This document shows, piece by piece, positions 3,274 to 34,464 of a stretch of DNA of 64,000 nucleotides (position 1 is the stretch's first letter; each line of letters opens with the position of its first letter). A model generated the notes under the pieces. The model was not told the origin of the DNA. It did no database searches and worked only from the letters and a program-made list of their open reading frames with translations. The DNA lies in the IMG/VR virus record IMGVR_UViG_3300017917_003143, positions 124,001 to 188,000 of that record, one strand, 5' to 3'. The translations under genes were made by a program, and so were the position numbers.

Positions 3274-6200
3274 ATGGACATCTATGAATTAGACAGCTAC
3301 CGCCTGTCAGACGCGGTAAAGTTTCACACTGAACTCAATCCTGCACTTTGGGACGGCAAAACCATGCGTCCCGAAGTGCGCGAGGCCCTGCTTAAAATCG
3401 CTGATGATTTTAAGACCTTCATGGGCATCGATGATCTTGCCATAGAAGACATCACTGTTTCAGGCTCCAACACCGCGTTCTCATACACACCACATTCAGA
3501 CATTGATCTACATTTACTGGTTGATTTCAGCAAGCTCAATCCCGACGAAGTTTACCAAGAGCTTTTCAATGCTAAAAAATATCAATACAACGATCAACAC
3601 GATATAAAAATCAGAGGCTATGACGTCGAGCTCTATGTTCAAGACTCGAACAAACCTGTGCGTAGCCTTGGCGAATACAGTATCATCAACAATGACTGGA
3701 CTCGTATTCCAGTACAGCGCCGAGGCAATCTCGACGAAAAATCTACACAATCAAAATATGAAAAATTAAAAGGTTTGATTGAGCTTGCTACCAACAGCGA
3801 TGATCTACAACAAGTCACAGCAGTCACAGACACACTGAAAAAATATCGCCAGGCTGGGTTGGATGAGCATGGTGAATTTGGCCCAGAGAATCTGGCTTAT
3901 AAGATATTGCGAACACAGGGCTATGTAGAAAGATTATTCAAGCACAAGGCCAATCTCGAAGATGCGAAATTGAGCTTGGCTGAACGCAAAAAGAAGAAAA
4001 CAAAATCTAAAAAGAAATTCCGTTATGGTGCCTTTGGCGGATATTATTATCCCGGATACGGTTATTACGGACAGACTGATGCCGTGGCTGACGGTGGTGG
4101 CGATGGCGGTGGTGAATCAGTAAAAGAATCCACAGTCAATGTTGAAAAGAAATCGATTCCATTGGACAAAGTCGTGCGTCGTTTTGTACACTTTGCTGCC
4201 AAGCATCTTAAATTAAAACAATTACCAAAGATTAAATTACGAAAAGGTGAGCTCAGCCACGACATACATTCCATGGGACACTATGTGGATGATAAAAAGA
4301 CCGTGGAAGTAGAAACCAAGGATCGCCATGTCATGGATATCCTGCGTACCCTGGCACACGAACTCACACACTATAGACAGCATGAACGCTTGGGCAAAGA
4401 CATGCCTGACACAGCAGGACGCACAGGCAGTCCCTATGAGAATGAAGCCAACACATTGGCTGGCATCATCATGCGTCATTTCCAGAACAAGTATCCAGAA
4501 TTCTTTGCCAGCACTGTGAGCGAAGATGGTGACAGCGTGGCCGCCCAATACGGAGATCAGACTCCACCTGGACCAGAGTCCAAACCTACCATGCCCAAGG
4601 GAACGGTGCGGGTTGATGTGTCAGACGTTTACGACTGGTATAAACTGGGACAAAATATCAGCAACCTCGATAGAGTGGATCCTAAAATTTTTGGTAAAGG
4701 ACCACCCAGCACTATCGTCAGTTTTGGTGATGAAGAAACTGAACACAAGTACATCGACCATTTAAAAAAATTAGGGTTGACGACCACTGATATCGATCCT
4801 GTTGATCCCAATCAACCTCCTGGTATGCCGCGTCAAAAAGTTGATCCTACCTACAATGTAGACGAAACCATTGATGCTCCTGTGAGCAAAGATGCCAAGG
4901 CCAACCTTGACTACTACAAATTTATCCGTGGCAAACAGCAGTTGGGTCGCCCGCTGACCAAATCAGAAATGCAGTTCCTTAGCAAGTATCAACTCGCACA
5001 GCATCTTAAGAAACAAGTTGGTGAACAAGAACTCGAAGAAGGGATAGGTCGGGCATTGGGCACAGCCGCTGTGGCCGGTGCCATGGCCCTGGGGTCACCT
5101 GCTGCCAAAGCACAAAGCCCACTGCAAACAGCACACAACATTGGCAGTATAATTTACAACAAGAACATCACCCGAGCTGGCGCTGAAGAAGAGATCAAAG
5201 GCATGGCCAGAGATTTGGCACGTGGCGATCAAGAAATACGTGTGGGTGGCAAACGCATCTGGGGAGGCCCTCAAGCACAGGGTGAGCGAGTGGCAGCCAA
5301 TGGTGTAGGTGCCACTCCCGAAGCCGCATTCCAAGATGCGCTGAACAGAGCCTACACAGATGCCAATCGTCGTTACGGTCCTATCTCTGTAGGAGACTGG
5401 CGACCCATTGACCGAGAAAAAGAATTAGAACAAGTGGGTGGACAATATCGTGCGGCTGTGGTCATACAAGGTCCAGCACCTGTAAAAGAAGATGCGTCAG
5501 GTTATATTCCTACAAAAAAGCAGGCCAAGGATCCACGATTTAAAACAGCACTCACAGTGGATATCAAGCCTGGACAGTTAGGCAAAGAAGCCAACAAGCT
5601 GGGATTACAAACAGACAGCCAAGGTCGTCCTGATCTCTTGATGAAAAACTTGGCCAATGCGTTGAAAGAATACAAAGAGACCGGAGTGTTTGAAGCTGTC
5701 AAACCTGTTGCTCCTGTCATACCATCACGAGCACCCAAGACAGAATACCCACCCATGGTCAAGCAAAAGACCAGTCTACCTCAAGATAAACCGACACCGC
5801 GTCCAGACGGCACAGGTCGTATCATCAACTATGAAATACGAGAAGAAGAAGACTTGTTAGAAGTCAAAATGTCACCATCTTCTCTGGAAGCCTGGGCTCG
5901 TAGTCCCGAAGCTGAAGGCATACGTGCTGGATTTGAAGCCGAAATGATCTTCCGTGACACCAAGCGTGAAGACGATGAAGAGGAAATGGAGCCCGACTAC
6001 GACTATGACGAGCGTCCGGATGACATTGATCATGTCGTAGACTTCTTCTCTAATGACGATTATGGTTATGGCTTGAGCTCACGTGGTGCTAGAAGCCTGC
6101 GCGAAGATCTATTCAACGAATTTATTGAATGGGCTGATGAACAAATAGCAGAATCATGGGACAACAATGCTGAGGACCAAGTCAAGGACTACATGGAAAA

Positions 6201-8301
6201 CAACGTCTGGGGCGATGACGAAGAACGTGAAAAACGCATCGCTGACAAAATAGACGAACTGTTTCCTGACGAAGATCCAGAACCAATATTGGCAGCTGGC
6301 GCAGGTGCTCCAAGATTTACCCGTAGTTCAGACCAAACAGCATATACACAAGAAAACGATTTATATGCCAAATACCGAGAAGCTTCAGATGCGGCCTATG
6401 AAGAGTTTGAAGCTGAAGCCGAGAGCGAATACGAAAACCAAGGGCACTACTACGACGAAGCTCGCGACTACTACTTTGAAATGATGCGAGAAGGCGGCGA
6501 CTACGATGAACGAGAGTTCTTGCGTGACAAGTATGGTTACATGAGCGAGATCGCCAGCAGTTTCACTCTTGATTGGCCTTATTGGACCGGGGGTGGTAAT
6601 TCAGGCTACGGCAGTAGAGATTGGGAAGATATCGCCACCAGCTTAGAACGTGCTGTGAGAATGGATGTCAAAGTAGGATCAGGCTATCACTCTGTGACCC
6701 GCCGAGACGATCGTTATATCATAGAACCTGACGGATCGTTAGACCCTGATGACTACGAGGATGCCGGTCTTGAAATCGTAAGTCCGCCAATGCCATTGCC
6801 CACGGCCTTGGACCAGTTGCAGAAAGTCATAGAGTGGGGCAACAATACAGCCGACGCCTATACCAATGATTCAACAGGTCTTCACATGGGCGTGAGCATA
6901 CCTTATGTGGGCGGTGATGTTGACTATGTCAAGCTGGTGTTGTTCATGGGCGACGAATATGTGCTAGAAAAATTTGGCCGTGCGTCAAACACCTACACAG
7001 CATCGGCCATGCAGAAGCTACGTCAAAACATGGCAGGTGCCAGAAACCGTGGCGAACTCACAGAAGCCAAGTTAGACCCCTTGGGTGCATTAGAGTTAGT
7101 ACAAAAGAATCTCATTGAGCTGGCCGCAAGATATGTGCAGAATGGTGTAGGTAATTCAAAATACACTTCAGCCCACATCAAAGATGGCTACATCGAGTTC
7201 CGTAGCCCCGGTGGAGACTACTTGGCCATGGAGAGCCGTGGCGAGTTTGATGACATCAAGAACACCATGTTGCGTTTTGCTCGTGCCATGCAGATCGCTG
7301 GCAACCCTGCTCTTGAGCGCAAAGAGTATGCCAAGAAACTCTACAAATTGATCTCACCAGGCGCACAAGACGATGGGTTAAAACTGTTTTCCCAATACGC
7401 CGCAGGTACTATCAGCCCTGAACAGCTCAAGAAGCAGTGGGCCGACGCTGTGCTACAGAAAGAGCTACCCACCACAGGCAAAGAAGAATACGAAGTCTAT
7501 AGCATGGATAAAAAGAATAGCCCCGACGGCATCATTGATACATTCTATGCCAGAGACTACGACAGTGCCTATGACCAGTACAGGAAGAAATACAGCAATG
7601 ATCCACGCTGGAACCAACTTGATGTGCGTTTAAAGATGCCTTGGTTTGATGTGTATGGACCCGACGGTGAGGAAGTCGCGACCATAAGATCTCGAGATAT
7701 CAATCAAGCCAAAGAAAAGGCCATGAACCAGTTTGAATACTGGTCAGACGATTGGAAAATATATCGCAGGCCCGATAACACACCCGAACCAAAGTTAAGT
7801 GTACGAGCTCAAGTGGCCAAGCGTATCAAAGAGCCTAAAGTAAGCCCAGCACAGGCCGCAGACAATGCCCGGGATTCCCAACAGCTACAAGCTCGCATAG
7901 GAGAACCACGACCCGCTGGTGCTGTGGGCGACACTGGCTACTATCGCGTGACTTGGGATGAACGCAGGGACGGTGAGATACGCAGTGATGCACTGAACAT
8001 AGATGCACCCAACGCCACAGCGGCCATGGATCGTGTGCGTGATGCACTGCAACTGCAAGGTCGAGATATCGTACAGATATCAGCTGATGCACAACAACCT
8101 CCAGCTTGGCGAGATCAATTGGCCCAACAAGTTCGTACAGCATCACCTCGCGCCAACTATGAATTGTATCAATACGATGATCCAACACGAGTAATAGGCG
8201 TGATGCATCATGCCACAGCTGATGAAGTACGTGCATACATTGATCAACAAGAACAAGAAGGCATGCCTCCAGGATTTTTACGAGTAAGACAGGTATCATG
8301 A
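3274..8301 (+). CDS. 1675 aa polyvalent protein: Pol-beta-type nucleotidyltransferase + HExxH zincin + amidoligase-like domain + repeats
   Basis: GS..SDIDLH (DID at 3499-3507); AHELTH (4357-4371); GFEAE/DGSL/GLEIVSPP/STGLHMGVS/IEFR. Confidence 0.75.
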   Translation: MDIYELDSYRLSDAVKFHTELNPALWDGKTMRPEVREALLKIADDFKTFMGIDDLAIEDITVSGSNTAFSYTPHSDIDLHLLVDFSKLNPDEVYQELFNAKKYQYNDQHDIKIRGYDVELYVQDSNKPVRSLGEYSIINNDWTRIPVQRRGNLDEKSTQSKYEKLKGLIELATNSDDLQQVTAVTDTLKKYRQAGLDEHGEFGPENLAYKILRTQGYVERLFKHKANLEDAKLSLAERKKKKTKSKKKFRYGAFGGYYYPGYGYYGQTDAVADGGGDGGGESVKESTVNVEKKSIPLDKVVRRFVHFAAKHLKLKQLPKIKLRKGELSHDIHSMGHYVDDKKTVEVETKDRHVMDILRTLAHELTHYRQHERLGKDMPDTAGRTGSPYENEANTLAGIIMRHFQNKYPEFFASTVSEDGDSVAAQYGDQTPPGPESKPTMPKGTVRVDVSDVYDWYKLGQNISNLDRVDPKIFGKGPPSTIVSFGDEETEHKYIDHLKKLGLTTTDIDPVDPNQPPGMPRQKVDPTYNVDETIDAPVSKDAKANLDYYKFIRGKQQLGRPLTKSEMQFLSKYQLAQHLKKQVGEQELEEGIGRALGTAAVAGAMALGSPAAKAQSPLQTAHNIGSIIYNKNITRAGAEEEIKGMARDLARGDQEIRVGGKRIWGGPQAQGERVAANGVGATPEAAFQDALNRAYTDANRRYGPISVGDWRPIDREKELEQVGGQYRAAVVIQGPAPVKEDASGYIPTKKQAKDPRFKTALTVDIKPGQLGKEANKLGLQTDSQGRPDLLMKNLANALKEYKETGVFEAVKPVAPVIPSRAPKTEYPPMVKQKTSLPQDKPTPRPDGTGRIINYEIREEEDLLEVKMSPSSLEAWARSPEAEGIRAGFEAEMIFRDTKREDDEEEMEPDYDYDERPDDIDHVVDFFSNDDYGYGLSSRGARSLREDLFNEFIEWADEQIAESWDNNAEDQVKDYMENNVWGDDEEREKRIADKIDELFPDEDPEPILAAGAGAPRFTRSSDQTAYTQENDLYAKYREASDAAYEEFEAEAESEYENQGHYYDEARDYYFEMMREGGDYDEREFLRDKYGYMSEIASSFTLDWPYWTGGGNSGYGSRDWEDIATSLERAVRMDVKVGSGYHSVTRRDDRYIIEPDGSLDPDDYEDAGLEIVSPPMPLPTALDQLQKVIEWGNNTADAYTNDSTGLHMGVSIPYVGGDVDYVKLVLFMGDEYVLEKFGRASNTYTASAMQKLRQNMAGARNRGELTEAKLDPLGALELVQKNLIELAARYVQNGVGNSKYTSAHIKDGYIEFRSPGGDYLAMESRGEFDDIKNTMLRFARAMQIAGNPALERKEYAKKLYKLISPGAQDDGLKLFSQYAAGTISPEQLKKQWADAVLQKELPTTGKEEYEVYSMDKKNSPDGIIDTFYARDYDSAYDQYRKKYSNDPRWNQLDVRLKMPWFDVYGPDGEEVATIRSRDINQAKEKAMNQFEYWSDDWKIYRRPDNTPEPKLSVRAQVAKRIKEPKVSPAQAADNARDSQQLQARIGEPRPAGAVGDTGYYRVTWDERRDGEIRSDALNIDAPNATAAMDRVRDALQLQGRDIVQISADAQQPPAWRDQLAQQVRTASPRANYELYQYDDPTRVIGVMHHATADEVRAYIDQQEQEGMPPGFLRVRQVS

Positions 8302-9577: not shown

Positions 9578-10179
9578 TGAGAGCATGGGAGTTGGGTGAG
9601 GTGCAGATACTACGCAAGGTCCAGAAAAAAGGCCGCAATCTCTATCAATTGCCTCGCCGTGGAAAGCCTATACCACAGGGTTGGGAATCTGAATATCTTG
9701 GTTTTCCAGTGGGTCGTACCAGCGGGCTAGAAATATGGCAGTTCAATGAAGGTCCTGTGACATCATACACTGTGTTTGATCCTGAGTCACGCAGAGCCAC
9801 CCTGACTATCAGTGGAAGCAAGTACCCTGACAATCCTGACAGTTTCATCGTGTTTGGTCTATATGCCGCACCTGGCAATCCTGTGCGAGCCGCAGACTTT
9901 TACCGATATCTTATTACCAAGCAAGGCTTGACCATGATATCTGATCGACTGCAGAGTCCAGGTGGATTGCGAGTGTGGCAAGAGTTGGAACGTAGATTTC
10001 CACAGAGCGTCACTGTATACGGGTTTGATACCAAGACCGATGAACCCATAAACATTTCAACACAAGACACATCAGACACACACGTAGAACCCGATGAGGT
10101 AGATCAAGCCGCACCTGGCATGAAGCGAGATCTACAGCATAAAGCACGTTACATTAGATTGGTAGCCACAGCAAGATGA
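9577..10179 (+). CDS. MRAxE-type protein, possible GNAT-like fold
   Basis: FYRYL...SDRLQSPGGLRVWQEL pattern. Confidence 0.35.
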   Translation: MRAWELGEVQILRKVQKKGRNLYQLPRRGKPIPQGWESEYLGFPVGRTSGLEIWQFNEGPVTSYTVFDPESRRATLTISGSKYPDNPDSFIVFGLYAAPGNPVRAADFYRYLITKQGLTMISDRLQSPGGLRVWQELERRFPQSVTVYGFDTKTDEPINISTQDTSDTHVEPDEVDQAAPGMKRDLQHKARYIRLVATAR

Positions 10180-10814
10180 GAGCACAAGATTTTATTCCTA
10201 CCAATCGAGAGTTTATACTCTATATCAACGGACGACCTGCAGTAAAGTATCAGCACGAAGGTGATGCCTTGCGAGACATGGATCACCTACGAAGAAAAGA
10301 TCCTAACACACGATTAGAGCTCAAACATGAAGTGTGTGGCATTGAAACTCTCCGCAAGATCAACGAATACAAGATTAACAATCAATCAGGCATCGGTTCT
10401 GTGCCCAAGAATCAAGACATTGATTATTTTGGACTGCGTGTGGCCATGCGCCCTAGCACGTTCCTTAAGCTCAGTCTGCCTTTGCCCAATACGCCTCAAG
10501 ATCAGCAGTCTATCGAATATGTCAAACAACACAAAGACACCGAAGGTATAGGCGCACCTTTCCTGGAAATAGACGTTCCTCAAGGCTGGGAGTCCGGTGA
10601 TTTATCTAAACCTGCCAGGGTGGTAGGGCACGATGGACGACACAGGATGGCTGCTATATTGCAGAGCGAAGGCGACGATCCTGTGGAAACACACATATTC
10701 CCTTTGGGACTGCGCCGCCGTCATTTTGATGCCAATCCTGAATGGGCCAAAGAACTCAATCAAGTCATCATTGGCCAGCGCGGCAACACTGTGCCAGGCC
10801 CTATTTTTAAGTAA
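10176..10814 (+). CDS. ParB/Srx-like domain protein
   Basis: VVGHDGRHRMAAI (DGxHR). Confidence 0.6.
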   Translation: MRAQDFIPTNREFILYINGRPAVKYQHEGDALRDMDHLRRKDPNTRLELKHEVCGIETLRKINEYKINNQSGIGSVPKNQDIDYFGLRVAMRPSTFLKLSLPLPNTPQDQQSIEYVKQHKDTEGIGAPFLEIDVPQGWESGDLSKPARVVGHDGRHRMAAILQSEGDDPVETHIFPLGLRRRHFDANPEWAKELNQVIIGQRGNTVPGPIFK

Positions 10815-11862
10815 AGTAATCCTCGAGAGTACCTTTGCGTTTCACGTCTAACGTGACACAGTGGAATCCACCGCTGAGGGTGCGGCTCTGGCGCATGGGC
10901 AATCCAATGCTTTCAATACCCCAACGCTGTAGTTCTCGCATGAGTTCTGTTTGATTTTCATCCACTATGACCAAGCGTTCGTTGACGCTGAGCAAGTTCA
11001 ATCCTATGTACTTGCTACAAGGACTGATGCCACCAGCAAGATTGCTGCCAACATCAGGAACTTTTTCTCCGGGCCAAAAGATCTTGTCCCAGGATTCAAA
11101 GATCGGTGGATACCAGTCGGGTGTGCAACGGTCGCCATTGAACAACACCAGGCCTGGACGCAAAGGAATCACTGTAGAGTCAAAGTGTGCGAAACTGTAA
11201 TACTTTTCTGCCAAGTGTATGCGATACTTGTCTCCGATGATGCTCTTGAGCCATTGATAACCTAACAAGTTTCCGCTGTTGCTGACTTGGTACAGCAGGT
11301 CTCGGCCCAGTCGCACGATGTTGGGAGCATCAAACACTATCTCTCGATTGAGCAAAGTTGGATCTTCGAGATTGTCCAGCTGATAGCTGTCATCAGCCAA
11401 GACAGGTTTGGGTGCTGAAATCCATTTGGTACCATCGGCCATCCACTCATACAGCATGTCTCGATAGATGCGTGTTTCAAAATATCGACTGCGCATAGGG
11501 CTTGGACATTCAATGATCATGCCGTCCAATGGCAACAGCAAGTCTCGCGGACAGTAGCTATACCAACCCGACGTGGTCCACTCAGGAGTGGAAAATTTCG
11601 CGCTGTGATCTTGAGGTATGGGCCTGCGTACTTTGACGCCCAATTTTTTGAGCTCATCGCTGAGACGATCAAGATCCTCATTGGCTTCATCGATGATGCG
11701 CCGATCATGTGGTCCTTCGAGATGTTGGATATTTTCCCAAGGTTCGTTGGCATAGCAAAAGCTGTGTGTGCTTTTGTTCAAGGTGGGCAACTGTGCATGG
11801 TCAGCGATTCCGACCACTATTTCTTCCAAGGGATCCCAGTCATTGTGACTGCATACGGGCAT
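10807..11862 (-). CDS. amidinotransferase (glycine/inosamine-phosphate amidinotransferase family)
   Basis: DPLEEIVVG, CPRD, FDAPN, HFDST, GGFHC (Asp/His/Cys triad). Confidence 0.9.
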   Translation of the reverse strand: MPVCSHNDWDPLEEIVVGIADHAQLPTLNKSTHSFCYANEPWENIQHLEGPHDRRIIDEANEDLDRLSDELKKLGVKVRRPIPQDHSAKFSTPEWTTSGWYSYCPRDLLLPLDGMIIECPSPMRSRYFETRIYRDMLYEWMADGTKWISAPKPVLADDSYQLDNLEDPTLLNREIVFDAPNIVRLGRDLLYQVSNSGNLLGYQWLKSIIGDKYRIHLAEKYYSFAHFDSTVIPLRPGLVLFNGDRCTPDWYPPIFESWDKIFWPGEKVPDVGSNLAGGISPCSKYIGLNLLSVNERLVIVDENQTELMRELQRWGIESIGLPMRQSRTLSGGFHCVTLDVKRKGTLEDYFT

Positions 11863-12691
11863 AACGTTCTCCTATTTCTTGTGATATACAAACACGGTTC
11901 CATTGGCTACCGCGGTTAAATTCTTGATATTGTTCTCCCCCGAGCCCAAACAAAATACATTTGGTAGGTTCAAGGTCCAATTCTTTGACTACTTGATCAT
12001 AGATATCTTCGTAGGTTTTCCAGTTCCAATCTATGCTGTGATTCTCCATGAAATCTATGGCACAAGCCATGCTGTGTCCGGGTACTTGATGATTTTTATT
12101 AAAAAAATCAATTCCATCATCGATGTCTTCCCGTTGCCATCTGATGCCTGCACGTAAAAACTGTGCTCCATGGAATGCTTTGCTGATGCTGGATGCCACG
12201 GTTTCGATACAAGCATGAGATAGATCCACTGAGAGATCTTTGCTGATAGCGATGTAAGCCATGTCTACCAACACAGGAATACCCAACTGTGTACATTTCC
12301 TCATGAGTGCATCCATGTCAGGATGCACATCGCCGAGGTCGCTGAATGGGCAACTGATTACCACAGCATCATTTTCGTGCAAAGGTTCATCATCGATATA
12401 ACACCAGTCAATGGCATTTTTCAAGCAGACCTGGTGATACATAAATTCCCCACGGAAAAATCTCATCCTGCGAGTGTGGTGTTTGAGATAAAAATGATCA
12501 AAGGCCTGCACGGATCCGTGGCAAAATGATGCATGGGTGAACTGATCAAAACCGTGGAGTTGGAACGACCCTCCTTTGACCCATGATGTAAAAGTTTTGG
12601 TATAAATTCCCAATAAATCTTCGTGCTGTACCGGCACTGGATTTAATTTTACCGAATCATTTTGTATGGGAAAGGCGCTACGGAGTGGCAT
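11840..12691 (-). CDS. PLP-dependent (fold type I) transferase-like enzyme
   Basis: VLVDMAY and SSISKAF motifs. Confidence 0.65.
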   Translation of the reverse strand: MPLRSAFPIQNDSVKLNPVPVQHEDLLGIYTKTFTSWVKGGSFQLHGFDQFTHASFCHGSVQAFDHFYLKHHTRRMRFFRGEFMYHQVCLKNAIDWCYIDDEPLHENDAVVISCPFSDLGDVHPDMDALMRKCTQLGIPVLVDMAYIAISKDLSVDLSHACIETVASSISKAFHGAQFLRAGIRWQREDIDDGIDFFNKNHQVPGHSMACAIDFMENHSIDWNWKTYEDIYDQVVKELDLEPTKCILFGLGGEQYQEFNRGSQWNRVCISQEIGERYARMQSQ

Positions 12692-12694
12692 GAT

Positions 12695-12731
12695 GATTTA
12701 TATATGGTTATTGTGCTTGCGGACTTAAATA
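12695..12731. promoter_or_regulatory. divergent late-type promoters
   Basis: TATAAATC on minus (12695-12702); TTAAATA on plus (12725-12731). Confidence 0.55.
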
Positions 12732-12735
12732 TATC

Positions 12736-13293
12736 ATGACAAAAGAATACGGATTTTTCAAAAATATCCCCGGCGACTATCAACAAGTGATAGAAAATCT
12801 GCCCTGGAATTTTTCCGATCATTGCATGTGGCCCAGAGAAACATACAAAAAAGATCACGATGGAGAGATCGCTCCATTCTATGACACAGGATATTACACT
12901 CCTGAAAACACACAGCTATGGCAGACCAGATTGGATGAAACCAGCATCGACGTCGCATCATCCGCACAACAAGTTCCCATACTGGATCACACCGTGACTT
13001 TTATCAAGTTGGATCCAGGGCACACTCTACCTTGGCATCGAGACGCATTCTATTTGCTCAAACAAAAACGTCCCAATTGGAAAGAACAAAATCTCAAGCC
13101 CATACGCTATCTGATCTTTCTTGAAGACTGGAAATTGGGCCATTTCGTGCAGTTGGAAGATCAGGTGGTAACACATTGGAAATCCGGTGACTGCTGGTAT
13201 TTCTGCAATGACACTTATCATTTGGGCACCAATGCAGGATTAGAACCATTTGTCAGCATGCAAGTCAGCGGATTCAAACAAACTGCCATTTAG
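12736..13293 (+). CDS. 2OG-Fe(II)/cupin-type hydroxylase-like protein
   Basis: LPWHRD...YHLGTN triad; paralog of 33922..34464. Confidence 0.6.
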   Translation: MTKEYGFFKNIPGDYQQVIENLPWNFSDHCMWPRETYKKDHDGEIAPFYDTGYYTPENTQLWQTRLDETSIDVASSAQQVPILDHTVTFIKLDPGHTLPWHRDAFYLLKQKRPNWKEQNLKPIRYLIFLEDWKLGHFVQLEDQVVTHWKSGDCWYFCNDTYHLGTNAGLEPFVSMQVSGFKQTAI

Positions 13294-13326
13294 ATTAAAT
13301 ACGTTATACCAAACAGCGAGGGTATC

Positions 13327-13590
13327 ATGTACAACTATCAAGCCCTGTTCGAACAGCTCGTTCCAGAGGATTTTGAAAGCTCAGTGGCACCAAGATCTAA
13401 ATCGATCAACACCAAACACAAAGCCGCTGCCTACCTTGGCAAGGACATCGACGAAACGATGAATCCCACAGATTTTAAACGTCTGCGAGCCAAGGCCAAT
13501 AAAATGAAAAAGTCTCAAAACAAAGCCATCCGGGCACGTGGGGCCAAACTCAGTAGACAGCTATCGTGGTACAACAATTTCCATAATTGA
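13327..13590 (+). CDS. small basic hypothetical protein
   Basis: 87 aa, upstream TAAATA and GAGGG. Confidence 0.6.
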   Translation: MYNYQALFEQLVPEDFESSVAPRSKSINTKHKAAAYLGKDIDETMNPTDFKRLRAKANKMKKSQNKAIRARGAKLSRQLSWYNNFHN

Positions 13591-13609
13591 CCAGTCATTA
13601 AACACGCGG

Positions 13610-13623
13610 TAAATATCTTTATG
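13610..13623 (+). promoter_or_regulatory. late promoter/start unit TAAATATCTTTATG
   Basis: identical 14-mer at 63569-63582. Confidence 0.6.
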
Positions 13624-13920
13624 AAAAATAAATTTGTCAAGGTCAATTTTGATTTGCACTGCGACTGGAATAAAGCGCCGCCTGTTTATCGAGTCTATGT
13701 TGGGCATGAGCTTTTTACAGAACGCACTTATATCTGGGGCGTGACACAGTTCCTCCAGGAAATATTACAGTTAAATGCTCCTCCAGGAAAATACACTATC
13801 AGGGTGGATAATCTCGGTGATCCTGAGTGCCAATTTAAAATACGCAACTTGACAGCGTCGCACGGTCCTGTGCGTATACTTGACAGCAAAACCTTTGAGA
13901 TTACCAATGAGAGCGCATGA
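13621..13920 (+). CDS. hypothetical protein
   Basis: 99 aa; TAAATA 5 nt before ATG. Confidence 0.7.
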   Translation: MKNKFVKVNFDLHCDWNKAPPVYRVYVGHELFTERTYIWGVTQFLQEILQLNAPPGKYTIRVDNLGDPECQFKIRNLTASHGPVRILDSKTFEITNESA

Positions 13921-14089
13921 ATTCATAGTGGAAACCACGGTTAGCGGCGGCATAGCCCCTGTGGTCATGCCCATAGGAGACATGCTGTCAAGAACCCAGC
14001 CTACAGCGCCCGTAGATAAATATAAAAAGAATTCAAGAAAGAAGAAACCCAATGCTGTCAGACGATTTGAAAACTCTATTAGCCAGTAA
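13907..14089 (+). CDS. small MRAxE-type protein (MRAHEFIVE)
   Basis: start moved to ATG 13907 on the motif. Confidence 0.65.
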   Translation: MRAHEFIVETTVSGGIAPVVMPIGDMLSRTQPTAPVDKYKKNSRKKKPNAVRRFENSISQ

Positions 14090-14492
14090 CTTTGCTTACT
14101 ACATCAAAGCACAGATGTTCCACTGGAACGTGGAAGGTCCTGATTTCGTGCAACTGCACGAACTCTTTGCCAATGTCTACGAGTTTGCTTACAGTGGACA
14201 TGACAAAGTGGCAGAGTACATCCGTACCATGGATGATTATGCTCCTGGCAGTCTTGAGCGTTTTTCCGAATTAAGTCAGATTCCTGGACAAACAAAGATT
14301 CCACGTGCCCGACTCATGATTGAAGAGCTGTTAAACGATACCGAAACATTGAAGGGCATCGTCATGCAGACTTTCCAGTCAGCACAAGCAGAAGGACGCG
14401 AAGACATCGCCAACTTCATGGCCGAGCGCCAAGATGGTCTGGGCAAATACACATGGCAGATACGTGCCACGCTAAAAGATTCGAGAGCATGA
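14052..14492 (+). CDS. dps: Dps/ferritin-like protein
   Basis: FHWNVEGPDFVQLHELF, DKVAE ferroxidase-type motifs. Confidence 0.9.
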   Translation: MLSDDLKTLLASNFAYYIKAQMFHWNVEGPDFVQLHELFANVYEFAYSGHDKVAEYIRTMDDYAPGSLERFSELSQIPGQTKIPRARLMIEELLNDTETLKGIVMQTFQSAQAEGREDIANFMAERQDGLGKYTWQIRATLKDSRA

Positions 14493-14493
14493 C

Positions 14494-15348
14494 ATGGCTG
14501 ATTTACGCAAGATCCTTGAATCCTTCTCCCGTATAGAACAAGAAAGCCTCAGCTCTCAGCAAAAGAGCGTGAAGCAACTGCCTGCCCTGTTCAAGCCACA
14601 AAAAACATCTCCACAGTTATCAGGCCCATATCCTGGCAAGAATGCCACCTTGGGTTATCTAGTGGGCGAAGGTGATGAGCAAGGTTATGGCAGTGAAGTT
14701 GGGGATACTGGCGCAGATGAAACACCAGATGGCGTAGATCCAGACACCAAATCATTCCTTGAAGGTAGATTAACAAATCCAGGTGAGCAAGACACTCCTG
14801 TGGCACAGGCTATAATACGTCGCATACTCACACAGAGACTTGACCTATTGTCTAAATACGGCCCTGAGTTGGTTGGCAGTGCTGTTGACGATGTCGCTGA
14901 CTGGGTTGGTGATGTAGAAGAAATAGGTACCAGTGATGTCAGTGGGTGGGTCAATCAAGTTGAACGCATGCTCAAAGAAAATCCACCTGAAGCGTTTGGT
15001 CTGTCAGAAGCACAAGCCACCGAAGACGTCATCTCTACAGTAAAGAAAAAGCTGGGCGACTATCTGTCCGACTTATCAAAAGAAATCAAATCAGACTCTG
15101 ACTTAAAAGACAAAATTCCGCAGGATGTAGATAAAATTTCTCCTGCTGTAAAGACCATTACAACTGATGATGGTAAAGAAATCAAGATACACGGCAACGA
15201 AGATGATGGTTTCCGTATCACCATACGAAATAAACCACACTCGGCAACTTTTGAAAGCCTGGACCATGCTGTCATGGCCTGTGAGATGTATTTGAATCGC
15301 CGCAGAATGCGCATGCCACACAACGAAGATTACTTGGAAGAACAATAA
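14494..15348 (+). CDS. modular hypothetical protein
   Basis: 284 aa; segments bounded by VGE/FLE/LSE/LEE. Confidence 0.7.
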   Translation: MADLRKILESFSRIEQESLSSQQKSVKQLPALFKPQKTSPQLSGPYPGKNATLGYLVGEGDEQGYGSEVGDTGADETPDGVDPDTKSFLEGRLTNPGEQDTPVAQAIIRRILTQRLDLLSKYGPELVGSAVDDVADWVGDVEEIGTSDVSGWVNQVERMLKENPPEAFGLSEAQATEDVISTVKKKLGDYLSDLSKEIKSDSDLKDKIPQDVDKISPAVKTITTDDGKEIKIHGNEDDGFRITIRNKPHSATFESLDHAVMACEMYLNRRRMRMPHNEDYLEEQ

Positions 15349-31215: not shown

Positions 31216-32401
31216 ACTATACTACATGGGCCTTGAGTCATACGAGGCTCGTTATACACTACAACTCACAGAATGGAATCGACGTGTTTTTGACCGCCGT
31301 GGCCTAGATGTTGTGTATGTGCCTGGATCAACTATTGACAATACCAAGAGTATTTCAGTAGGTCAGGTTTTAGACGCACACGGTCGCAGTTATTTTGGCA
31401 TGAGCCAGATGATGAATCTTGTACAGATGATGCGAAATGGAGAGGTCACAAATGAAGATGTCATTTATTTCGAAGATATGTTCCAGCCCGGTATCGAGAG
31501 CTTACCTTACATTATGGATCAGATCCCTGCAAATGATCGCCCTCGCATTTACGTTCGCTGTCTTGCTCAATCCATTGATCCTGATGATTTCGTACATGTA
31601 TGGGGTATGGCGAAATGGATGGGACTCTACGAACAAATGGTTAACGAGTTTGTTACAGGAGTTCTCGCCACAAACGAAGAGATGGTTGCTCATATGCGGA
31701 TTGCTGGATGGACTGCTCCTATATACAATATTAGTGGTCTAGCATTTGGCAAAGATGAAGTTCTCAGTCGAGTACAACTTCCTACTCCTTTTGAACAAAG
31801 ACCCAAGCGTGTGGGTTTTGCCGCGAGATTCGATCAAGAAAAGCAACCAGGATTCTTCATGGACTTGGTAGAAGAATATCAAAAGGTCTACCCAGATGTA
31901 CAGTTTGCTATCTATCAGGGCGGACCATTGCGTTCGAACAATCCTGAATACATCGATCGCGCTCGTCGATTAGAGTCCGAAGGTAAACTTTTGATTTTTG
32001 AAAATCTAAGCAAGAACGAATACTACCATCATCTGGCACACAACACTCGAGTGTTGTTTAACTGTGCCTTGCAAGACTGGGTTTCAAACACTGTCAGCGA
32101 AGCAGATACCTTGGGCTGTAATGTGCTGTATCCTGCTTATCGTAGTTTCCCAGAAACCTTTGCCAATGATCCTGATCGTTTGTATATTCCTTGGAGCGAA
32201 GACGATGCCTTCAACAAGTTGACAAATCTCTTGCGCACTCCACATCACAACATGGGATTGATTTCTGAATGGAACAATCGAACCATCGATCGTATCGTAG
32301 ATATCATCGAAGGCAATGGTGAACAATGGAATCGTAGCGGTAATCGTTACAGAGATCACGTTCCATACGCCAAATACCCAGTGGTCAAGATTGAAGAATG
32401 A
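31208..32401 (+). CDS. GT-B fold glycosyltransferase
   Basis: ARFDQEKQP; SEADTLGCNVLYP; likely GTG start 31208. Confidence 0.75.
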   Translation: MRKLYYMGLESYEARYTLQLTEWNRRVFDRRGLDVVYVPGSTIDNTKSISVGQVLDAHGRSYFGMSQMMNLVQMMRNGEVTNEDVIYFEDMFQPGIESLPYIMDQIPANDRPRIYVRCLAQSIDPDDFVHVWGMAKWMGLYEQMVNEFVTGVLATNEEMVAHMRIAGWTAPIYNISGLAFGKDEVLSRVQLPTPFEQRPKRVGFAARFDQEKQPGFFMDLVEEYQKVYPDVQFAIYQGGPLRSNNPEYIDRARRLESEGKLLIFENLSKNEYYHHLAHNTRVLFNCALQDWVSNTVSEADTLGCNVLYPAYRSFPETFANDPDRLYIPWSEDDAFNKLTNLLRTPHHNMGLISEWNNRTIDRIVDIIEGNGEQWNRSGNRYRDHVPYAKYPVVKIEE

Positions 32402-33351
32402 GTAGAATAATTGTAACAGGCGCAGGTGGATACATCGGAGGCCAGACAGTATTGAAACTGTTAGATCAAGGTCATAGTGTATATGCAGTTGATCAAACAC
32501 TTCCGCCACCTCATCTAATGGACGTCGGATGCAAATGGCTCACAGGTGACTTTGCCGGAGAAGTATTTTTAAGCTCTATCAAAAGTTTCAATCCAGAAGC
32601 CATCATCCATTGCGCCGGGACCAGTCTAGTAGGCCCTAGTGTAACCAATCCAATGTTGTACTATGACAATAACTTTGTCAAAACTAAAACAATGTTGGAT
32701 TACTTGATCCAAAACAAACTCACTGACATTCGTGTGATTTTTAGTTCTTCAGCGGCTACATATGGAGAACCGATAATGACTCCGTGCCAAGAAGAAGATC
32801 CAGCATTGCCGATCAGTCCTTATGGTGAAAGCAAACTCATGATCGAAATGATGATGAAAGCCTACGCCAATGCTTACGACTTGGATTTTGTTGCCTTCCG
32901 TTACTTCAATGCTTGCGGTGCTGATAGCCAAGCTCGTCATGGGCAAGCACCAGGTGCCACGCATATCATTGCTCGGGTACTTGAAAGTATTAGAGACGGC
33001 AAAGATTTTACTTTGTATGGCGATAACTATCCCACTCCTGATGGAACATGTATAAGAGATTACATACACGTGGAAGACATCGCTAATGCACACATCATGG
33101 CGATAAACTCGTCCGTTCCTGCAGGTGTTTATAACCTTGGCACGAATCAAGGCGCCAGCAATCGAGAAATCATTGCCATGTCTGAAAAAGTAACAGGACA
33201 ACAGGTTGATCTTGCAGTGGGTCCTATCCGTGCTGGAGATCCTGCTGTGCTCACTGCGTCAGCTGAACGATTTAACTCTATCAGTGGGTGGGCACCACAG
33301 TTTAATCTCGAAGACATGGTCCGACATGCCTGGACTTGGTATGTTCGATAA
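32398..33351 (+). CDS. galE: UDP-glucose 4-epimerase
   Basis: TGAGGYIG, SSSAATYG, YGESK, FRYFNACG, RDYIHVED. Confidence 0.92.
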   Translation: MSRIIVTGAGGYIGGQTVLKLLDQGHSVYAVDQTLPPPHLMDVGCKWLTGDFAGEVFLSSIKSFNPEAIIHCAGTSLVGPSVTNPMLYYDNNFVKTKTMLDYLIQNKLTDIRVIFSSSAATYGEPIMTPCQEEDPALPISPYGESKLMIEMMMKAYANAYDLDFVAFRYFNACGADSQARHGQAPGATHIIARVLESIRDGKDFTLYGDNYPTPDGTCIRDYIHVEDIANAHIMAINSSVPAGVYNLGTNQGASNREIIAMSEKVTGQQVDLAVGPIRAGDPAVLTASAERFNSISGWAPQFNLEDMVRHAWTWYVR

Positions 33352-33919
33352 GATACTAAAGTTTGAAAATGAGTTGGCAGAGTACACAGGTGCTCCCTAT
33401 GCCATCATGACTGACTGCTGTACACATGCCATCGAACTGTGTTTGCGGCATGACAAGATCAGAGAATGCCAGTTCACTGCTTATACATATCTTTCAATAC
33501 CCATGCTCATGCACAAGTTGGGCATAGAGTATCAATTGATAGATCAGACTTGGACTGGCGAATATCATTTTATCAATACCAGAGTCTGGGATAGTGCTCG
33601 CAGATTAGAAAGAGGAATGTATCGCCCTGGATCCATGCAGTGCTTGAGCTTTGGTTACGGAAAACCCCTGGAGATTGGCCGTGGCGGAGCGATATTGTTG
33701 GATGATCAACGAGCTTACGAAATCATGATAAAGCAACGCTATGATGGGCGAGACTTGTCTATCATGCCCTGGCAAGATCAGCGAGAATTCAGTGTTGGAT
33801 ATCATTACAAACCCACCATCGAAGAAGCCGTGCGAGGTTCAGAATTATTGCCTCTGGTCAATGAGGAACCTAAATATGTACAGTACCCAGACTGTAGAAA
33901 TTTTATAATTAAGGATTAA
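33341..33919 (+). CDS. short DegT/DnrJ-type PLP aminotransferase
   Basis: CTHAIEL, DSA, SFGYGKPLEIGRGGAI; 192 aa only. Confidence 0.7.
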   Translation: MFDKILKFENELAEYTGAPYAIMTDCCTHAIELCLRHDKIRECQFTAYTYLSIPMLMHKLGIEYQLIDQTWTGEYHFINTRVWDSARRLERGMYRPGSMQCLSFGYGKPLEIGRGGAILLDDQRAYEIMIKQRYDGRDLSIMPWQDQREFSVGYHYKPTIEEAVRGSELLPLVNEEPKYVQYPDCRNFIIKD

Positions 33920-33921
33920 AA

Positions 33922-34464
33922 ATGTTTAACGCGGTTCATCTCGATTTTGATTTTAAACCCCTGCTCGATGCTGACTATTCAGTACACATGGGCAGTTGTA
34001 TCAAGCACCAGGTCTACGAACTAACTGATATACACGAAAAGTATGGCGGTTTTCCTGACAGCTATAATATACACAATACCAAGATACACCAACTATGGTG
34101 GGACAAGACACAGGTGGATTACGACGAGCTTGGCCGACAGCTGGGCATGGAAGTGATCACAGTGTCAACCATCAAGCAACCACCAGGGTGCGTGGTTCCG
34201 TTCCATAGAGATACCTTTTTCCAGATCGGCAAACAATACCCAGATCGTACTGAAACCAAAGTCCGAGCCAACATCTATATGGAAGACTATCGCATGGGAC
34301 AGTTTATACAGTACGAGCTCAATGGTAAATTTGAAACCAGTACCAATTGGAAAGCTGGCGATGGATTCATATGGGGTAGTGATGTACTACATGTGAGTTC
34401 AAACGCTGGATTTCAGGACAAGTACACCATGCAGGTTTCTGGATTTCTATTGACAACGGCCTAA
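33922..34464 (+). CDS. 2OG-Fe(II)/cupin-type hydroxylase-like protein
   Basis: VPFHRD...LHVSSN; paralog of 12736..13293. Confidence 0.6.
   Translation: MFNAVHLDFDFKPLLDADYSVHMGSCIKHQVYELTDIHEKYGGFPDSYNIHNTKIHQLWWDKTQVDYDELGRQLGMEVITVSTIKQPPGCVVPFHRDTFFQIGKQYPDRTETKVRANIYMEDYRMGQFIQYELNGKFETSTNWKAGDGFIWGSDVLHVSSNAGFQDKYTMQVSGFLLTTA

What the first reader, a model, noticed from the sequence alone, without database searches (positions are those of the whole stretch)
10807..13293. Divergent amidinotransferase + PLP enzyme + dioxygenase cassette in a phage
Seen: an intact Asp/His/Cys amidinotransferase overlaps a PLP enzyme on the minus strand, one of only two minus-strand loci here. It is back-to-back with an HxD...H oxygenase, with late-type promoters between them. 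Known: this family transfers the amidino group of Arg to an amine (glycine in GATM; aminocyclitol in StrB1, paired with an aminotransferase). Inference: the phage makes a guanidino compound, possibly a guanidino-sugar or hydroxylated amine for virion glycans or DNA hypermodification.
Basis: partly seen in the sequence, partly recalled or inferred. Interest (0 to 1): 0.78.

Follow-up and report, generated by a model that had tools for sequence, protein, structure and literature searches.

The report
Phage oxygenase–aminotransferase–amidinotransferase cassette
A 343-kb pond phage carries three intact, linked genes (a small iron-oxygenase-like protein, a short vitamin-B6 enzyme and a streptomycin-type amidinotransferase) that recur as a virus-only module in hundreds of aquatic phage contigs, usually among sugar-building genes, so it most likely adds a guanidino group to a sugar-like building block whose identity and destination are unknown.

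Summary
Gene A (10807-11862, minus strand) is a full-length amidinotransferase. Its best solved match is StrB1 (E 1e-100), and the Asp178/His226/Cys335 triad is intact. Gene B (11840-12691, minus strand) overlaps A by 23 nt. It is a short (283 aa) fold-type-I PLP enzyme with an invariant Schiff-base lysine. Gene C (12736-13293, plus strand) is a 185-aa double-stranded beta-helix protein with an invariant HxD...H triad.

C>B>A is the commonest gene order in IMG/VR phage contigs that carry B. None of about 77 bacterial homologue loci carries B or C. All three genes are under purifying selection.

The neighbours in relatives are radical SAM enzymes, further 2OG oxygenases, sugar-nucleotide enzymes, carbamoyltransferases and a virus-only ~390-aa family. 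The host genome has three more A paralogues and two more C paralogues beside sugar genes. It lacks the known entry enzymes for DNA hypermodification.

Best reading, at moderate confidence: oxidation, then transamination, then amidination of a sugar or cyclitol-type precursor, in the manner of streptidine synthesis. Substrate and target are not determined. Phage amidinotransferases were already annotated in CP220 and S-SCSM2R; the conserved module appears undescribed.

The parts
10807..11862 (-). Gene A: StrB1-clade L-arginine amidinotransferase homologue, 351 aa, with Asp178/His226/Cys335
   Evidence: PDB 1bwd E 1.3e-100. The triad columns are conserved. A lies in a phage-only clade with 98/98 support. 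dN/dS against a 94% relative is 0.007, with dS saturated.
11840..12691 (-). Gene B: short (283 aa) virus-specific class-I/II fold-type-I PLP enzyme with Lys171 as Schiff base; overlaps A by 23 nt
   Evidence: Pfam PF00155 at 21.3 bits. Model pLDDT 94.8, with HisC and CobD as top folds. Invariant residues are SxPFSDxG, D143, SxSK171, R180, R260 and R266. The family is virus-only in the Atlas. dN/dS is 0.12.
12736..13293 (+). Gene C: 185-aa double-stranded beta-helix protein with an invariant H101-x-D103...H162 triad; a probable Fe(II)/2OG oxygenase
   Evidence: Model pLDDT 91.8. Foldseek matches AsqJ, EasH, SnoN and AspH in the PDB, and JmjC, PhyH and AspH clusters in AFDB at TM 0.66-0.68. A profile hit to the distal-His motif of AtsK has E 0.002. 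dN/dS is 0.06.
12692..12735 (.). 44-bp divergent intergenic region. It holds TAAATA at 12726-12731 (plus strand, 4 nt before the start of C) and TATAAATC on the minus strand before B.
   Evidence: Sequence. The TAAATA motif is enriched upstream of ORFs genome-wide. Its function as a promoter is inferred, not shown.
32398..34464 (+). Second, possibly related sugar set in the same window: NDP-sugar 4,6-dehydratase/epimerase (32398-33351), a short DegT-like aminotransferase (33206-33919) and a C-family paralogue (33922-34464)
   Evidence: Pfam hits. The C-family membership of this ORF (genome coordinates 157922-158464) comes from BLAST clustering. A functional link to the cassette is inferred only.

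Best explanation
C, B and A form a three-enzyme tailoring cassette that ends in a guanidino group on a sugar-like or cyclitol-like (probably phosphorylated or nucleotide-linked) precursor. The phage then uses this precursor in a glycan or glycoconjugate.

Proposed steps, all inferred:
1. C, an Fe(II)/2-oxoglutarate oxygenase, oxidises or hydroxylates the precursor and creates or exposes a carbonyl.
2. B, a PLP aminotransferase, converts the carbonyl to an amine.
3. A takes the amidino group of L-arginine onto Cys335 and passes it to that amine, releasing ornithine.

This is the dehydrogenase, aminotransferase, StrB1 logic of streptidine synthesis, carried out with virus-specific partner enzymes.

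What is shown: the three folds, intact catalytic residues, purifying selection, and conserved linkage in phages among sugar-nucleotide and radical SAM genes.

What is not shown: the chemistry, the order of steps, the acceptor, and where the product ends up.
For: - A is far closer to StrB1 (inosamine-phosphate amidinotransferase, E 1e-100, nearly gap-free alignment) than to GATM, SxtG or HsvA (1e-60 to 1e-66).
- B's nearest solved folds are HisC and CobD, which act on phosphorylated substrates. Its PLP residues are invariant.
- C has an invariant HxD...H triad on a 2OG-oxygenase-like fold.
- Linkage: in 57 IMG/VR loci with at least 3 kb on both sides of B, C lies within 3 kb in 48, A in 41, and both in 38. 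C is immediately upstream on the same strand in 46.
- All pairwise sub-combinations occur: C-B without A, C-A without B, and B-A without C. This is what a modular oxidise/aminate/amidinate toolkit would give.
- Sugar context: 53 of 87 loci have a recognisable sugar-nucleotide enzyme within 10 kb. These include an RfaE-domain-II-like nucleotidyltransferase fused to a PMI cupin, 4,6-dehydratases, carbamoyltransferases, a nucleotide-sugar dehydrogenase, and a twitch radical SAM protein. From my own knowledge, the twitch radical SAM dehydrogenase BtrN belongs to that class.
- In the isolated cyanophage S-SCSM2R, a C-family protein sits directly upstream of the amidinotransferase among five glycosyltransferases.
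- CP220 has an A-like gene beside two GT-A genes and a PAP2 phosphatase.
- This genome has a second cassette, NDP-sugar dehydrogenase / C paralogue / A paralogue, and a third A paralogue beside a dehydratase, DegT and a carbamoyltransferase.
- The known DNA-hypermodification entry enzymes were not detected.
Against: - No enzyme assay, metabolite or expression data exist. The only sequencing run holding the locus is the source pond DNA metagenome.
- In this window the cassette stands alone, away from the sugar clusters of the genome.
- B is not of the DegT/StsC type used in known amino-sugar and aminocyclitol pathways. It could be a decarboxylase or lyase rather than an aminotransferase; CobD and C-S lyases are among its best fold matches.
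- C scores below the Pfam threshold. Its 2OG-binding residue is not established, and small cupins can also be sugar isomerases or epimerases.
- The genome shows no canonical NTP_transferase or GT1 and only a weak GT2.
- The glycosyltransferase reading of the ~390-aa X397 family rests on a 0.80 Atlas score and on a motif recalled from memory.
- The same islands also hold enzymes typical of peptide tailoring: B12-radical SAM, SPASM/twitch radical SAM, P4H-like oxygenases and a Trp halogenase.
Confidence: 0.45

Rival explanations
1. The cassette makes a free, small, non-sugar guanidino metabolite. Examples would be a hydroxylated or cyclised guanidino amino acid (the oxygenase plus PLP-enzyme logic of capreomycidine or enduracididine, VioC/VioD and MppO/MppP) or an amidinated polyamine (HsvA logic). 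The product would serve as an inhibitor, a signal or a DNA counter-ion.
For: HsvA, SxtG and GATM are also strong matches to A. The PLP-dependent arginine oxidase MppP is among B's fold matches. An oxygenase directly upstream of A recurs even when it belongs to a different 2OG family (L026). The authors of the S-SCSM2R paper suggested 'antibiotic synthesis genes' (PMC12801897).
Against: A is much closer to StrB1 than to the amino-acid or polyamine enzymes. No NRPS, ATP-grasp or exporter genes are linked. The most frequent recognisable partners are sugar-nucleotide enzymes. C and B are not orthologues of VioC/VioD or MppO/MppP; no sequence hits were found.
Confidence: 0.2
2. The enzymes modify a protein or peptide. 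This could be virion protein side chains (for example Lys or hydroxy-Lys to a homoarginine-like residue) or a RiPP-like peptide, together with the linked P4H-like oxygenases and radical SAM/SPASM enzymes.
For: Linked genes include P4H-type 2OG oxygenases, SPASM/twitch and B12 radical SAM enzymes, and a Trp halogenase. In S-SCSM2R, a second amidinotransferase and a prolyl dihydroxylase were detected in purified virions (PMC12801897). C's nearest named folds are Asp/Asn/Pro hydroxylases and JmjC.
Against: No precursor peptide, protease or leader-binding (RRE) gene was seen. Known members of the GATM/StrB1 family act on small molecules. A class-I aminotransferase acting on a protein has no precedent that I know of. 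Sugar-nucleotide genes are frequent partners.
Confidence: 0.12
3. The cassette hypermodifies phage DNA, for example formyl base to aminomethyl base to guanidinomethyl base, or amidination of a 7-aminomethyl-7-deazaguanine.
For: Phage DNA hypermodification pathways do use PLP enzymes, radical SAM enzymes and 2OG oxygenases (my own knowledge of the thymidine-hypermodification and TET literature). In T4-like contigs the module lies next to UvsX and gp32. The window also encodes GTP cyclohydrolase I and a PTPS/QueD homologue.
Against: No ThyA-type hydroxymethylase, C5-methyltransferase or TGT/DpdA was detected, and QueC gave only a sub-threshold match. No Tet/JBP was detected, but that control was uninformative. 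C's fold matches are not TET, JBP or AlkB. FolE and QueD are not adjacent to the cassette.
Confidence: 0.1
4. A works alone as an auxiliary metabolic gene in arginine, ornithine or guanidinoacetate metabolism, or merely as a hydrolase. Its linkage with B and C would then have no shared pathway.
For: Source databases auto-name many homologues 'dimethylarginine dimethylaminohydrolase' or 'glycine amidinotransferase'. A survey of viral auxiliary metabolic genes discusses creatine-pathway genes in ocean viruses (PMC11360552).
Against: No DDAH or arginine deiminase structure matched A even at E up to 10, while StrB1 matched at 1e-100. The adjacency is tight and conserved, B and A overlap by 23 nt here and in relatives, and B and C are virus-only families. 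These points argue for a shared pathway.
Confidence: 0.08

Closest known systems
StrB1, L-arginine:inosamine-phosphate amidinotransferase of streptomycin biosynthesis (PDB 1bwd), working after a dehydrogenase and the aminotransferase StsC
   Same: It is the best solved match to A: E 1.3e-100 and 340 bits, aligned end to end with only two short gaps, with the same Cys/His/Asp triad. The pathway logic is also the same, with a linked PLP enzyme that could supply the amine.
   Different: A belongs to a separate, phage-only clade (98/98 support) and is only about 44-47% identical to Streptomyces homologues. Its partner B is a truncated class-I/II enzyme, not a DegT/StsC-type one. The oxidant is a small 2OG-oxygenase-like cupin, not an inositol dehydrogenase. 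No kinase is linked.
Amidinotransferase genes already annotated in isolated phages: Synechococcus phage S-SCSM2R ORF309 ('inosamine amidinotransferase', PMC12801897) and Campylobacter phage CP220 gp086 ('possible glycine amidinotransferase')
   Same: They belong to the same family: 37% and 26% identity over at least 96% of A. Both sit among radical SAM and glycosyltransferase genes. S-SCSM2R ORF308 is a C-family protein directly upstream of ORF309.
   Different: Neither isolate has a B homologue; tblastn of B against 50,697 phage records found nothing. CP220 gp085 and gp082 are not C-like or B-like. No function has been shown for either gene. The S-SCSM2R authors call the reason for the genes 'unclear'.
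Hypervariable 'host recognition cluster' islands of pelagimyophages and cyanomyophages, which hold glycosyltransferases, rfaE, UDP-glucose dehydrogenase and radical SAM cassettes (PMC7029224)
   Same: The IMG/VR contigs carrying C>B>A are T4-like (terminase, gp32 SSB and UvsX lie next to the module). They carry the same kinds of partner genes.
   Different: That paper does not mention an amidinotransferase or this aminotransferase (0 occurrences of either term). Here the cassette lies in a 343-kb jumbo phage whose DNA polymerase is nearest to the Atu_ph07/Phosso group at 47-50% identity. It also lies outside that phage's own sugar clusters.
Histidinol-phosphate aminotransferase HisC and threonine-phosphate decarboxylase CobD (class-I/II fold-type-I PLP enzymes)
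   Same: They are the best structural matches to B, at E 1e-10 and TM 0.55-0.67. The PLP-binding Asp, Tyr, SxSK and Arg are shared.
   Different: Sequence identity is only 14-16%. B is 40-100 residues shorter. The usual NPTG motif reads PFSDxG. No solved structure matches B by sequence alone.

Membership tests
GATM/StrB1 amidinotransferase family (pentein superfamily) | Full-length sequence similarity to solved members | tested here: met
   1bwd E 1.3e-100 over residues 3-349. 5wpi, 6u1r and 1jdw match at 1e-60 to 1e-66.
GATM/StrB1 amidinotransferase family (pentein superfamily) | Catalytic Cys-His-Asp triad | tested here: met
   C335 and H226 are invariant. D178 is D, or E in 3 of 27 sequences. 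All align with the StrB1 motifs.
GATM/StrB1 amidinotransferase family (pentein superfamily) | Match to the Pfam model of the superfamily (PF02274) | tested here: not met
   No Pfam or NCBIfam family matched A at E up to 0.1 or 0.01. The paralogue at genome 55834-56754 hits PF02274 weakly. This reflects the coverage of the model and does not outweigh the PDB matches.
GATM/StrB1 amidinotransferase family (pentein superfamily) | Transfer of the amidino group of L-arginine to an amine, not hydrolysis | not testable with these tools
   Needs an enzyme assay.
Orthologue of StrB1 (streptidine pathway) | Groups with Streptomyces StrB1-type sequences, and is linked to an StsC/DegT-type aminotransferase, an inositol dehydrogenase and a kinase | tested here: not met
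   A falls in a separate phage clade. Its partner B matches PF00155, not DegT. No dehydrogenase or kinase lies in the cassette.
Class I/II aminotransferases (Pfam PF00155, fold type I) | Family model score over the curated cut-off | tested here: met
   21.3 bits against a cut-off of 19.7, E 1.8e-4, covering residues 106-211 only. This is marginal.
Class I/II aminotransferases (Pfam PF00155, fold type I) | Fold-type-I architecture | tested here: met
   Model pLDDT 94.8. There are 734 PDB matches at E<=0.001, led by HisC, CobD, C-S lyases and AspAT.
Class I/II aminotransferases (Pfam PF00155, fold type I) | PLP-binding residues: Schiff-base Lys, Asp to the pyridine N, Tyr, and the phosphate Ser/Arg | tested here: met
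   K171, D143, S168, S170 and R180 are invariant, and Y146 is conserved in at least 90% of 45 sequences. The D..AY and FSxSK motifs align with aminotransferase 3if2.
Class I/II aminotransferases (Pfam PF00155, fold type I) | Usual length (about 330-420 aa) and the NPTG motif | tested here: not met
   B is 283 aa, and the whole family is 275-311 aa. The motif reads PFSDxG.
Class I/II aminotransferases (Pfam PF00155, fold type I) | Transamination rather than decarboxylation or lyase chemistry | not testable with these tools
   A decarboxylase (CobD) and C-S lyases are among the best fold matches.
Fe(II)/2-oxoglutarate oxygenases | Double-stranded beta-helix fold | tested here: met
   Model pLDDT 91.8. 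PDB matches are AsqJ, EasH, FtmOx1, SnoN and AspH at E about 1e-5 and TM about 0.45. AFDB clusters JmjC, PhyH and AspH match at TM 0.66-0.68.
Fe(II)/2-oxoglutarate oxygenases | HxD/E...H iron-binding triad | tested here: met
   H101, D103 and H162 are invariant in 20 sequences down to 19% identity.
Fe(II)/2-oxoglutarate oxygenases | Basic residue binding the C5 carboxylate of 2OG | tested here: inconclusive
   R124 is invariant, but its position relative to the metal site was not examined. The usual Arg after the distal His is Q176 here.
Fe(II)/2-oxoglutarate oxygenases | Pfam family score over the cut-off | tested here: not met
   PF05118 scores 16.2 bits against a cut-off of 22.6. The profile matches only the distal-His motif of AtsK, at E 0.002.
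Known phage DNA hypermodification systems | An entry enzyme in the genome: ThyA-type hydroxymethylase, C5-methyltransferase plus TET, or DpdA/TGT | tested here: not met
   PF00303, PF00145 and PF01702 gave no match in the 343-kb genome. PF12851 also gave none, but that search rang in no control genome and is uninformative. Divergent DpdA could be missed.

The most novel reading that the evidence does not exclude
Aquatic T4-like and jumbo phages use a virus-only enzyme set to build a streptidine-like guanidinylated sugar or cyclitol. The set comprises the C oxygenase, the mini-aminotransferase B, the phage-clade amidinotransferase A, twitch radical SAM enzymes and the X397 transferase-like family. 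The phages would install the product on virions or on the infected cell surface. That would be a new class of viral glycan chemistry and would explain part of the 'host recognition cluster' islands of pelagiphages and cyanophages.
Probability: 0.3. Interest if true: 0.8.

Novelty: new variant of a known kind. Interest (0 to 1): 0.6.

Why it matters
Hypervariable islands rich in glycosyltransferase, radical SAM and 2OG-oxygenase genes are a large unexplained part of the genomes of abundant marine and freshwater myophages. This cassette gives a concrete handle on them. It is a compact, conserved, virus-specific trio, and one of its members has a well-understood chemistry: amidino transfer from arginine.

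If the product is a guanidino sugar or cyclitol, it would be the first such viral glycan component. It would also add two new enzyme subfamilies, a 283-aa aminotransferase and a 185-aa oxygenase. Finally, it would bear on how these phages alter virions or host surfaces.

A cultured phage, S-SCSM2R, carries the C-A pair, so the idea can be tested at the bench.

Tried and rejected
Searches that found nothing or added nothing:
- Megablast of 10000-14500 against 50,697 phage records gave no match.
- tblastn of B and of C against the same records gave no match.
- phmmer of B against the PDB found nothing, and C gave only noise.
- The single-protein scan of GTDB genomes with A found no relative. The profile scan then found 583, none with B or C nearby except phage-like MAG contigs.
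- C-domain fusion proteins of 520-595 aa were checked as Rosetta-stone clues. The remaining parts have no Pfam family.
- X397 has no Pfam or PDB match by profile. Only a weak Atlas lead to GT10 exists.
- CP220 gp085 and gp082 were tested as C-like and B-like proteins and rejected.
- The 247-aa Asp_Arg_Hydrox protein of L010 is not a close C homologue.
- c6, the radical SAM gene next to A in relatives, was tested as QueE. It gave only generic radical SAM or MoaA-like hits far below the cut-offs.
- A search for RNA evidence found only the source pond DNA run.

Ideas considered and set aside:
- DNA hypermodification markers were not detected. The Tet/JBP search also found nothing, but its control failed and it is uninformative.
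- The exact T4 late promoter TATAAATA is absent from the window. The sigma-70-type scan was not above chance.
- Chance ORFs or pseudogenes are excluded by homology and by dN/dS.


Full report
**1. What is there**

The window is bases 124001-188000 of a 343,632-bp virus record that CheckV rates 99% complete. The only sequencing run that holds the locus is a pond DNA metagenome. Its family-B DNA polymerase is T4-type. The nearest isolates are Sinorhizobium phage Phosso (50%) and Agrobacterium phage Atu_ph07 (47%), followed by Vibrio phage 2.275.O (45%) and the CBB/GAP32 group of jumbo myophages (about 43%).

- A: 10807-11862, minus strand, 351 aa.
- B: 11840-12691, minus strand, 283 aa, overlapping A by 23 nt.
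- C: 12736-13293, plus strand, 185 aa, divergent from B across 44 bp.

**2. The three proteins**

*Gene A.* A matches the solved amidinotransferases over its whole length. StrB1 (1bwd) scores E 1.3e-100. HsvA, SxtG and GATM score 1e-60 to 1e-66. No arginine deiminase or DDAH structure appears even at E up to 10. The active-site motifs align, and D178, H226 and C335 are conserved in 27 relatives, including three paralogues from the same genome. Pfam and NCBIfam models do not recognise A. PHROGs places it in phrog_25854, of unknown function.

*Gene B.* B is barely seen by Pfam: Aminotran_1_2 scores 21.3 bits against a cut-off of 19.7. No solved structure matches it by sequence. A 45-sequence alignment gives an AlphaFold model with pLDDT 94.8 and a fold-type-I architecture. 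The best matches are histidinol-phosphate aminotransferase, threonine-phosphate decarboxylase CobD, C-S lyases and aspartate or alanine aminotransferases.
- The PLP residue set is invariant: D143, S168-x-S170-K171 and R180. Y146 is conserved in at least 90% of sequences.
- Two C-terminal arginines, R260 and R266, are also invariant.
- The usual NPTG motif reads PFSDxG.
- The whole family is only 275-311 aa long.

*Gene C.* C folds with pLDDT 91.8 into a double-stranded beta-helix. It matches 2OG oxygenases in the PDB (AsqJ, EasH, FtmOx1, SnoN, AspH). It matches JmjC, PhyH and Asp/Asn-hydroxylase clusters in AFDB at TM 0.66-0.68. H101-x-D103...H162 is invariant down to 19% identity, as are R124, N166 and Q176. 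The Pfam Asp_Arg_Hydrox hit is below threshold.

Both B and C families are essentially virus-only in the ESM Atlas. A profile of C finds 1,235 representative clusters in the 1.84-billion-protein library.

**3.

- Close relatives with A at 94% identity keep the same divergent C | B-A layout and the same neighbours. In one of those contigs, L017, B is split into two ORFs.
- More distant phage contigs show C-B-A-dehydrogenase-epimerase, C-B-dehydrogenase-A, or C-A with B 4 kb away.
- A profile of B finds 323 IMG/VR viral contigs. In the 80 fetched, the commonest order is: 2OG oxygenase (c5) > C > B > A > radical SAM (c6) > X397 > twitch radical SAM < c10 < 2OG oxygenase (c7) < nucleotidyltransferase-cupin (c11). 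This block lies next to terminase, gp32-type SSB and UvsX genes.
- Among 57 loci with at least 3 kb on both sides of B, C is within 3 kb in 48, A in 41, and both in 38. Many of these contigs are near-duplicates, but several distinct architectures are represented.
- None of about 77 bacterial loci with an A homologue (41-54% identity) has B or C within 6 kb. The exceptions are two short MAG contigs that look like phage.
- A maximum-likelihood tree puts all phage A sequences in one clade with 98/98 support. This clade is separate from the Streptomyces StrB1-type clade and from a large alphaproteobacterial clade. It also includes three MAG contigs. L024 and L025 carry B and C. L026 lacks both, and its neighbours resemble phage islands.
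- dN/dS against the 94% relative is 0.007 for A (dS saturated), 0.12 for B and 0.06 for C.
- The cassette is therefore a real, selected and mobile phage module.
- The sub-combinations C-B, C-A and B-A all occur without the third gene.

**4. Context that bears on function**

- Recognisable partners within 10 kb of B are:
  - an RfaE-domain-II-like nucleotidyltransferase fused to a mannose-6-phosphate-isomerase cupin, in 23 loci;
  - NDP-sugar 4,6-dehydratase/epimerases, in 17 loci;
  - carbamoyltransferases, in 14 loci;
  - a nucleotide-sugar dehydrogenase, in 3 loci;
  - radical SAM enzymes, including an N-terminal-twitch type scoring over its NCBIfam cut-off.
- The most frequent partner, X397, occurs in 62 of 87 loci and in six copies in this genome. 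It is virus-only and matches nothing by sequence. A GT10 fucosyltransferase is only a weak Atlas lead.
- In the isolated cyanophage S-SCSM2R, a C-family protein (hhalign probability 98.8%) lies directly upstream of the annotated 'inosamine amidinotransferase', among five glycosyltransferases, a short DegT-like protein and a radical SAM enzyme. The authors listed the amidinotransferase, the DegT-like AHBA-synthase protein and the radical SAM enzyme as 'antibiotic synthesis genes' of unclear purpose. They also detected another amidinotransferase and a prolyl dihydroxylase in purified virions (PMC12801897).
- Campylobacter phage CP220 has an A-like gene among five radical SAM genes, two GT-A genes and a PAP2 phosphatase.
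- This genome holds three further A paralogues and two further C paralogues:
  - NDP-sugar dehydrogenase / C' / A' at 54.1-56.8 kb;
  - a further A paralogue at 62.0-63.0 kb;
  - a further A paralogue at 228.9-230.0 kb, beside a dehydratase, DegT, a carbamoyltransferase and a block of five radical SAM matches, two of them below the Pfam cut-off;
  - inside the window, a dehydratase / short DegT-like / C'' set at 32398-34464.
- The genome has 11 radical SAM matches, 9 of them over the Pfam cut-off.
- It has no detectable ThyA homologue, C5-methyltransferase, TGT/DpdA, canonical NTP_transferase or GT1. No Tet/JBP was detected either, but that control failed.

**5. Most likely mechanism**

A is the part with known chemistry. 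From established knowledge of GATM and StrB1, the amidino group of L-arginine is taken onto the active-site cysteine and passed to an amine, releasing ornithine.

The conserved, translationally coupled PLP enzyme upstream is best read as the supplier of that amine. The oxygenase-like C would then create the carbonyl to be aminated, or add a hydroxyl.

Three observations point to a sugar or cyclitol(-phosphate or -nucleotide) acceptor: the StrB1 affinity of A, the HisC/CobD (phospho-substrate) affinity of B, and the sugar-nucleotide neighbourhood. This is the streptidine logic rebuilt with virus-specific enzymes. I put it at 0.45.

The rivals are:
- a free guanidino amino acid or polyamine (0.2);
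- protein or peptide modification (0.12);
- DNA hypermodification (0.1);
- an unlinked metabolic or hydrolytic role for A (0.08).

None is excluded. The order of steps, the acceptor and the destination of the product are all inferred.

**6. Promoter claim**

TAAATA occurs 147 times in the genome, counting both strands, against roughly 300 expected from base composition. Of these, 84 lie within 100 nt upstream of ORF starts, mostly within 30 nt. One copy sits 4 nt before the start of C, and the next three downstream genes have one too. Upstream of B there is only TATAAATC. The motif resembles the T4 late box, but the exact box is absent from the window and no expression timing is known.

**7. 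Novelty and verdict**

Amidinotransferase homologues in phages have been annotated before, in CP220 and S-SCSM2R. Sugar and radical SAM islands of pelagimyophages and cyanomyophages have been described (PMC7029224).

In the searchable literature I found no description of the following:
- the conserved C-B-A module;
- its virus-only partner families;
- its phage-specific A clade;
- its spread from T4-like phages to a 343-kb jumbo phage.

I rate it a new variant of a known kind, with interest 0.6.

Noticed in passing
whole genome; examples in the window at 12726-12731 and upstream of 13327, 13621, 14052, 1037, 2300 and 3274: A TAAATA motif is depleted genome-wide: 147 copies on both strands against about 300 expected. 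Yet 84 copies lie within 100 nt upstream of ORF starts, many only 0-10 nt before the start codon. This suggests a phage-specific promoter element resembling the T4 late box, and possibly very short leaders.
   Followed up: partly
window 34522-35355 (+) and 38650-39189 (+): A GTP cyclohydrolase I (FolE) and a PTPS/QueD homologue are present. These are the first two enzymes of 7-deazaguanine or pterin synthesis. No TGT/DpdA was detected, and QueC gave only a sub-threshold match elsewhere in the genome.
   Followed up: partly
window 33922-34464 (+), with 32398-33351 and 33206-33919: A third C-family paralogue sits directly after an NDP-sugar 4,6-dehydratase/epimerase and a short (237 aa) DegT-like protein. 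The predicted start of the DegT-like ORF overlaps the dehydratase by about 150 nt.
   Followed up: partly
window 48430-48891 (+) and 48888-50813 (+): A 153-aa cytidylyltransferase-like protein is followed at once by a 641-aa B12-binding radical SAM enzyme. A similar 595-aa enzyme lies near the A homologue on MAG contig L026.
   Followed up: no
genome C1:53010-58042, 60868-64210 and 221000-243400 (outside the window): Three more amidinotransferase paralogues lie in the genome. Clusters 1 and 3 are sugar-type; cluster 2 is not: (1) X397 / NDP-sugar dehydrogenase / C paralogue / A paralogue; (2) an A paralogue with a fatty-acid-desaturase-like gene one ORF downstream; (3) dehydratase / DegT / X397 x2 / A paralogue / carbamoyltransferase, followed by five radical SAM matches (two below the Pfam cut-off) and then a 4,911-aa ORF.
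   Followed up: partly
window 3274-8301 (+): A 1,675-aa protein starts with a minimal nucleotidyltransferase-like motif (GS...D.D, judged by eye). Its counterpart in close relatives carries a weak Amidoligase_2 hit. Function unknown.
   Followed up: no
window 14052-14492 (+): A Dps/ferritin-like protein (Pfam Ferritin E 1e-12; PHROG 'DNA binding protein') lies three genes from the cassette. It is syntenic in the close relatives.
   Followed up: no
L017:7233-8023: In one contig of a close relative (A at 94% identity), B is split into ORFs of 182 and 81 aa, while sister contigs have it intact. This is either an assembly error or a recent frameshift.
   Followed up: no
L167-L177 and L183 (IMG/VR): A subgroup of phage contigs has dehydratase > C > B followed by a TPP-dependent E1-like protein and several X397 and dehydratase genes, with no amidinotransferase. 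The C-B pair may therefore feed a different tailoring step there.
   Followed up: no
P0357, P0369, P0399-P0401: Proteins of 520-595 aa carry an N-terminal C-family domain fused to a large region with no Pfam family. They are possible Rosetta-stone partners and were not resolved.
   Followed up: partly
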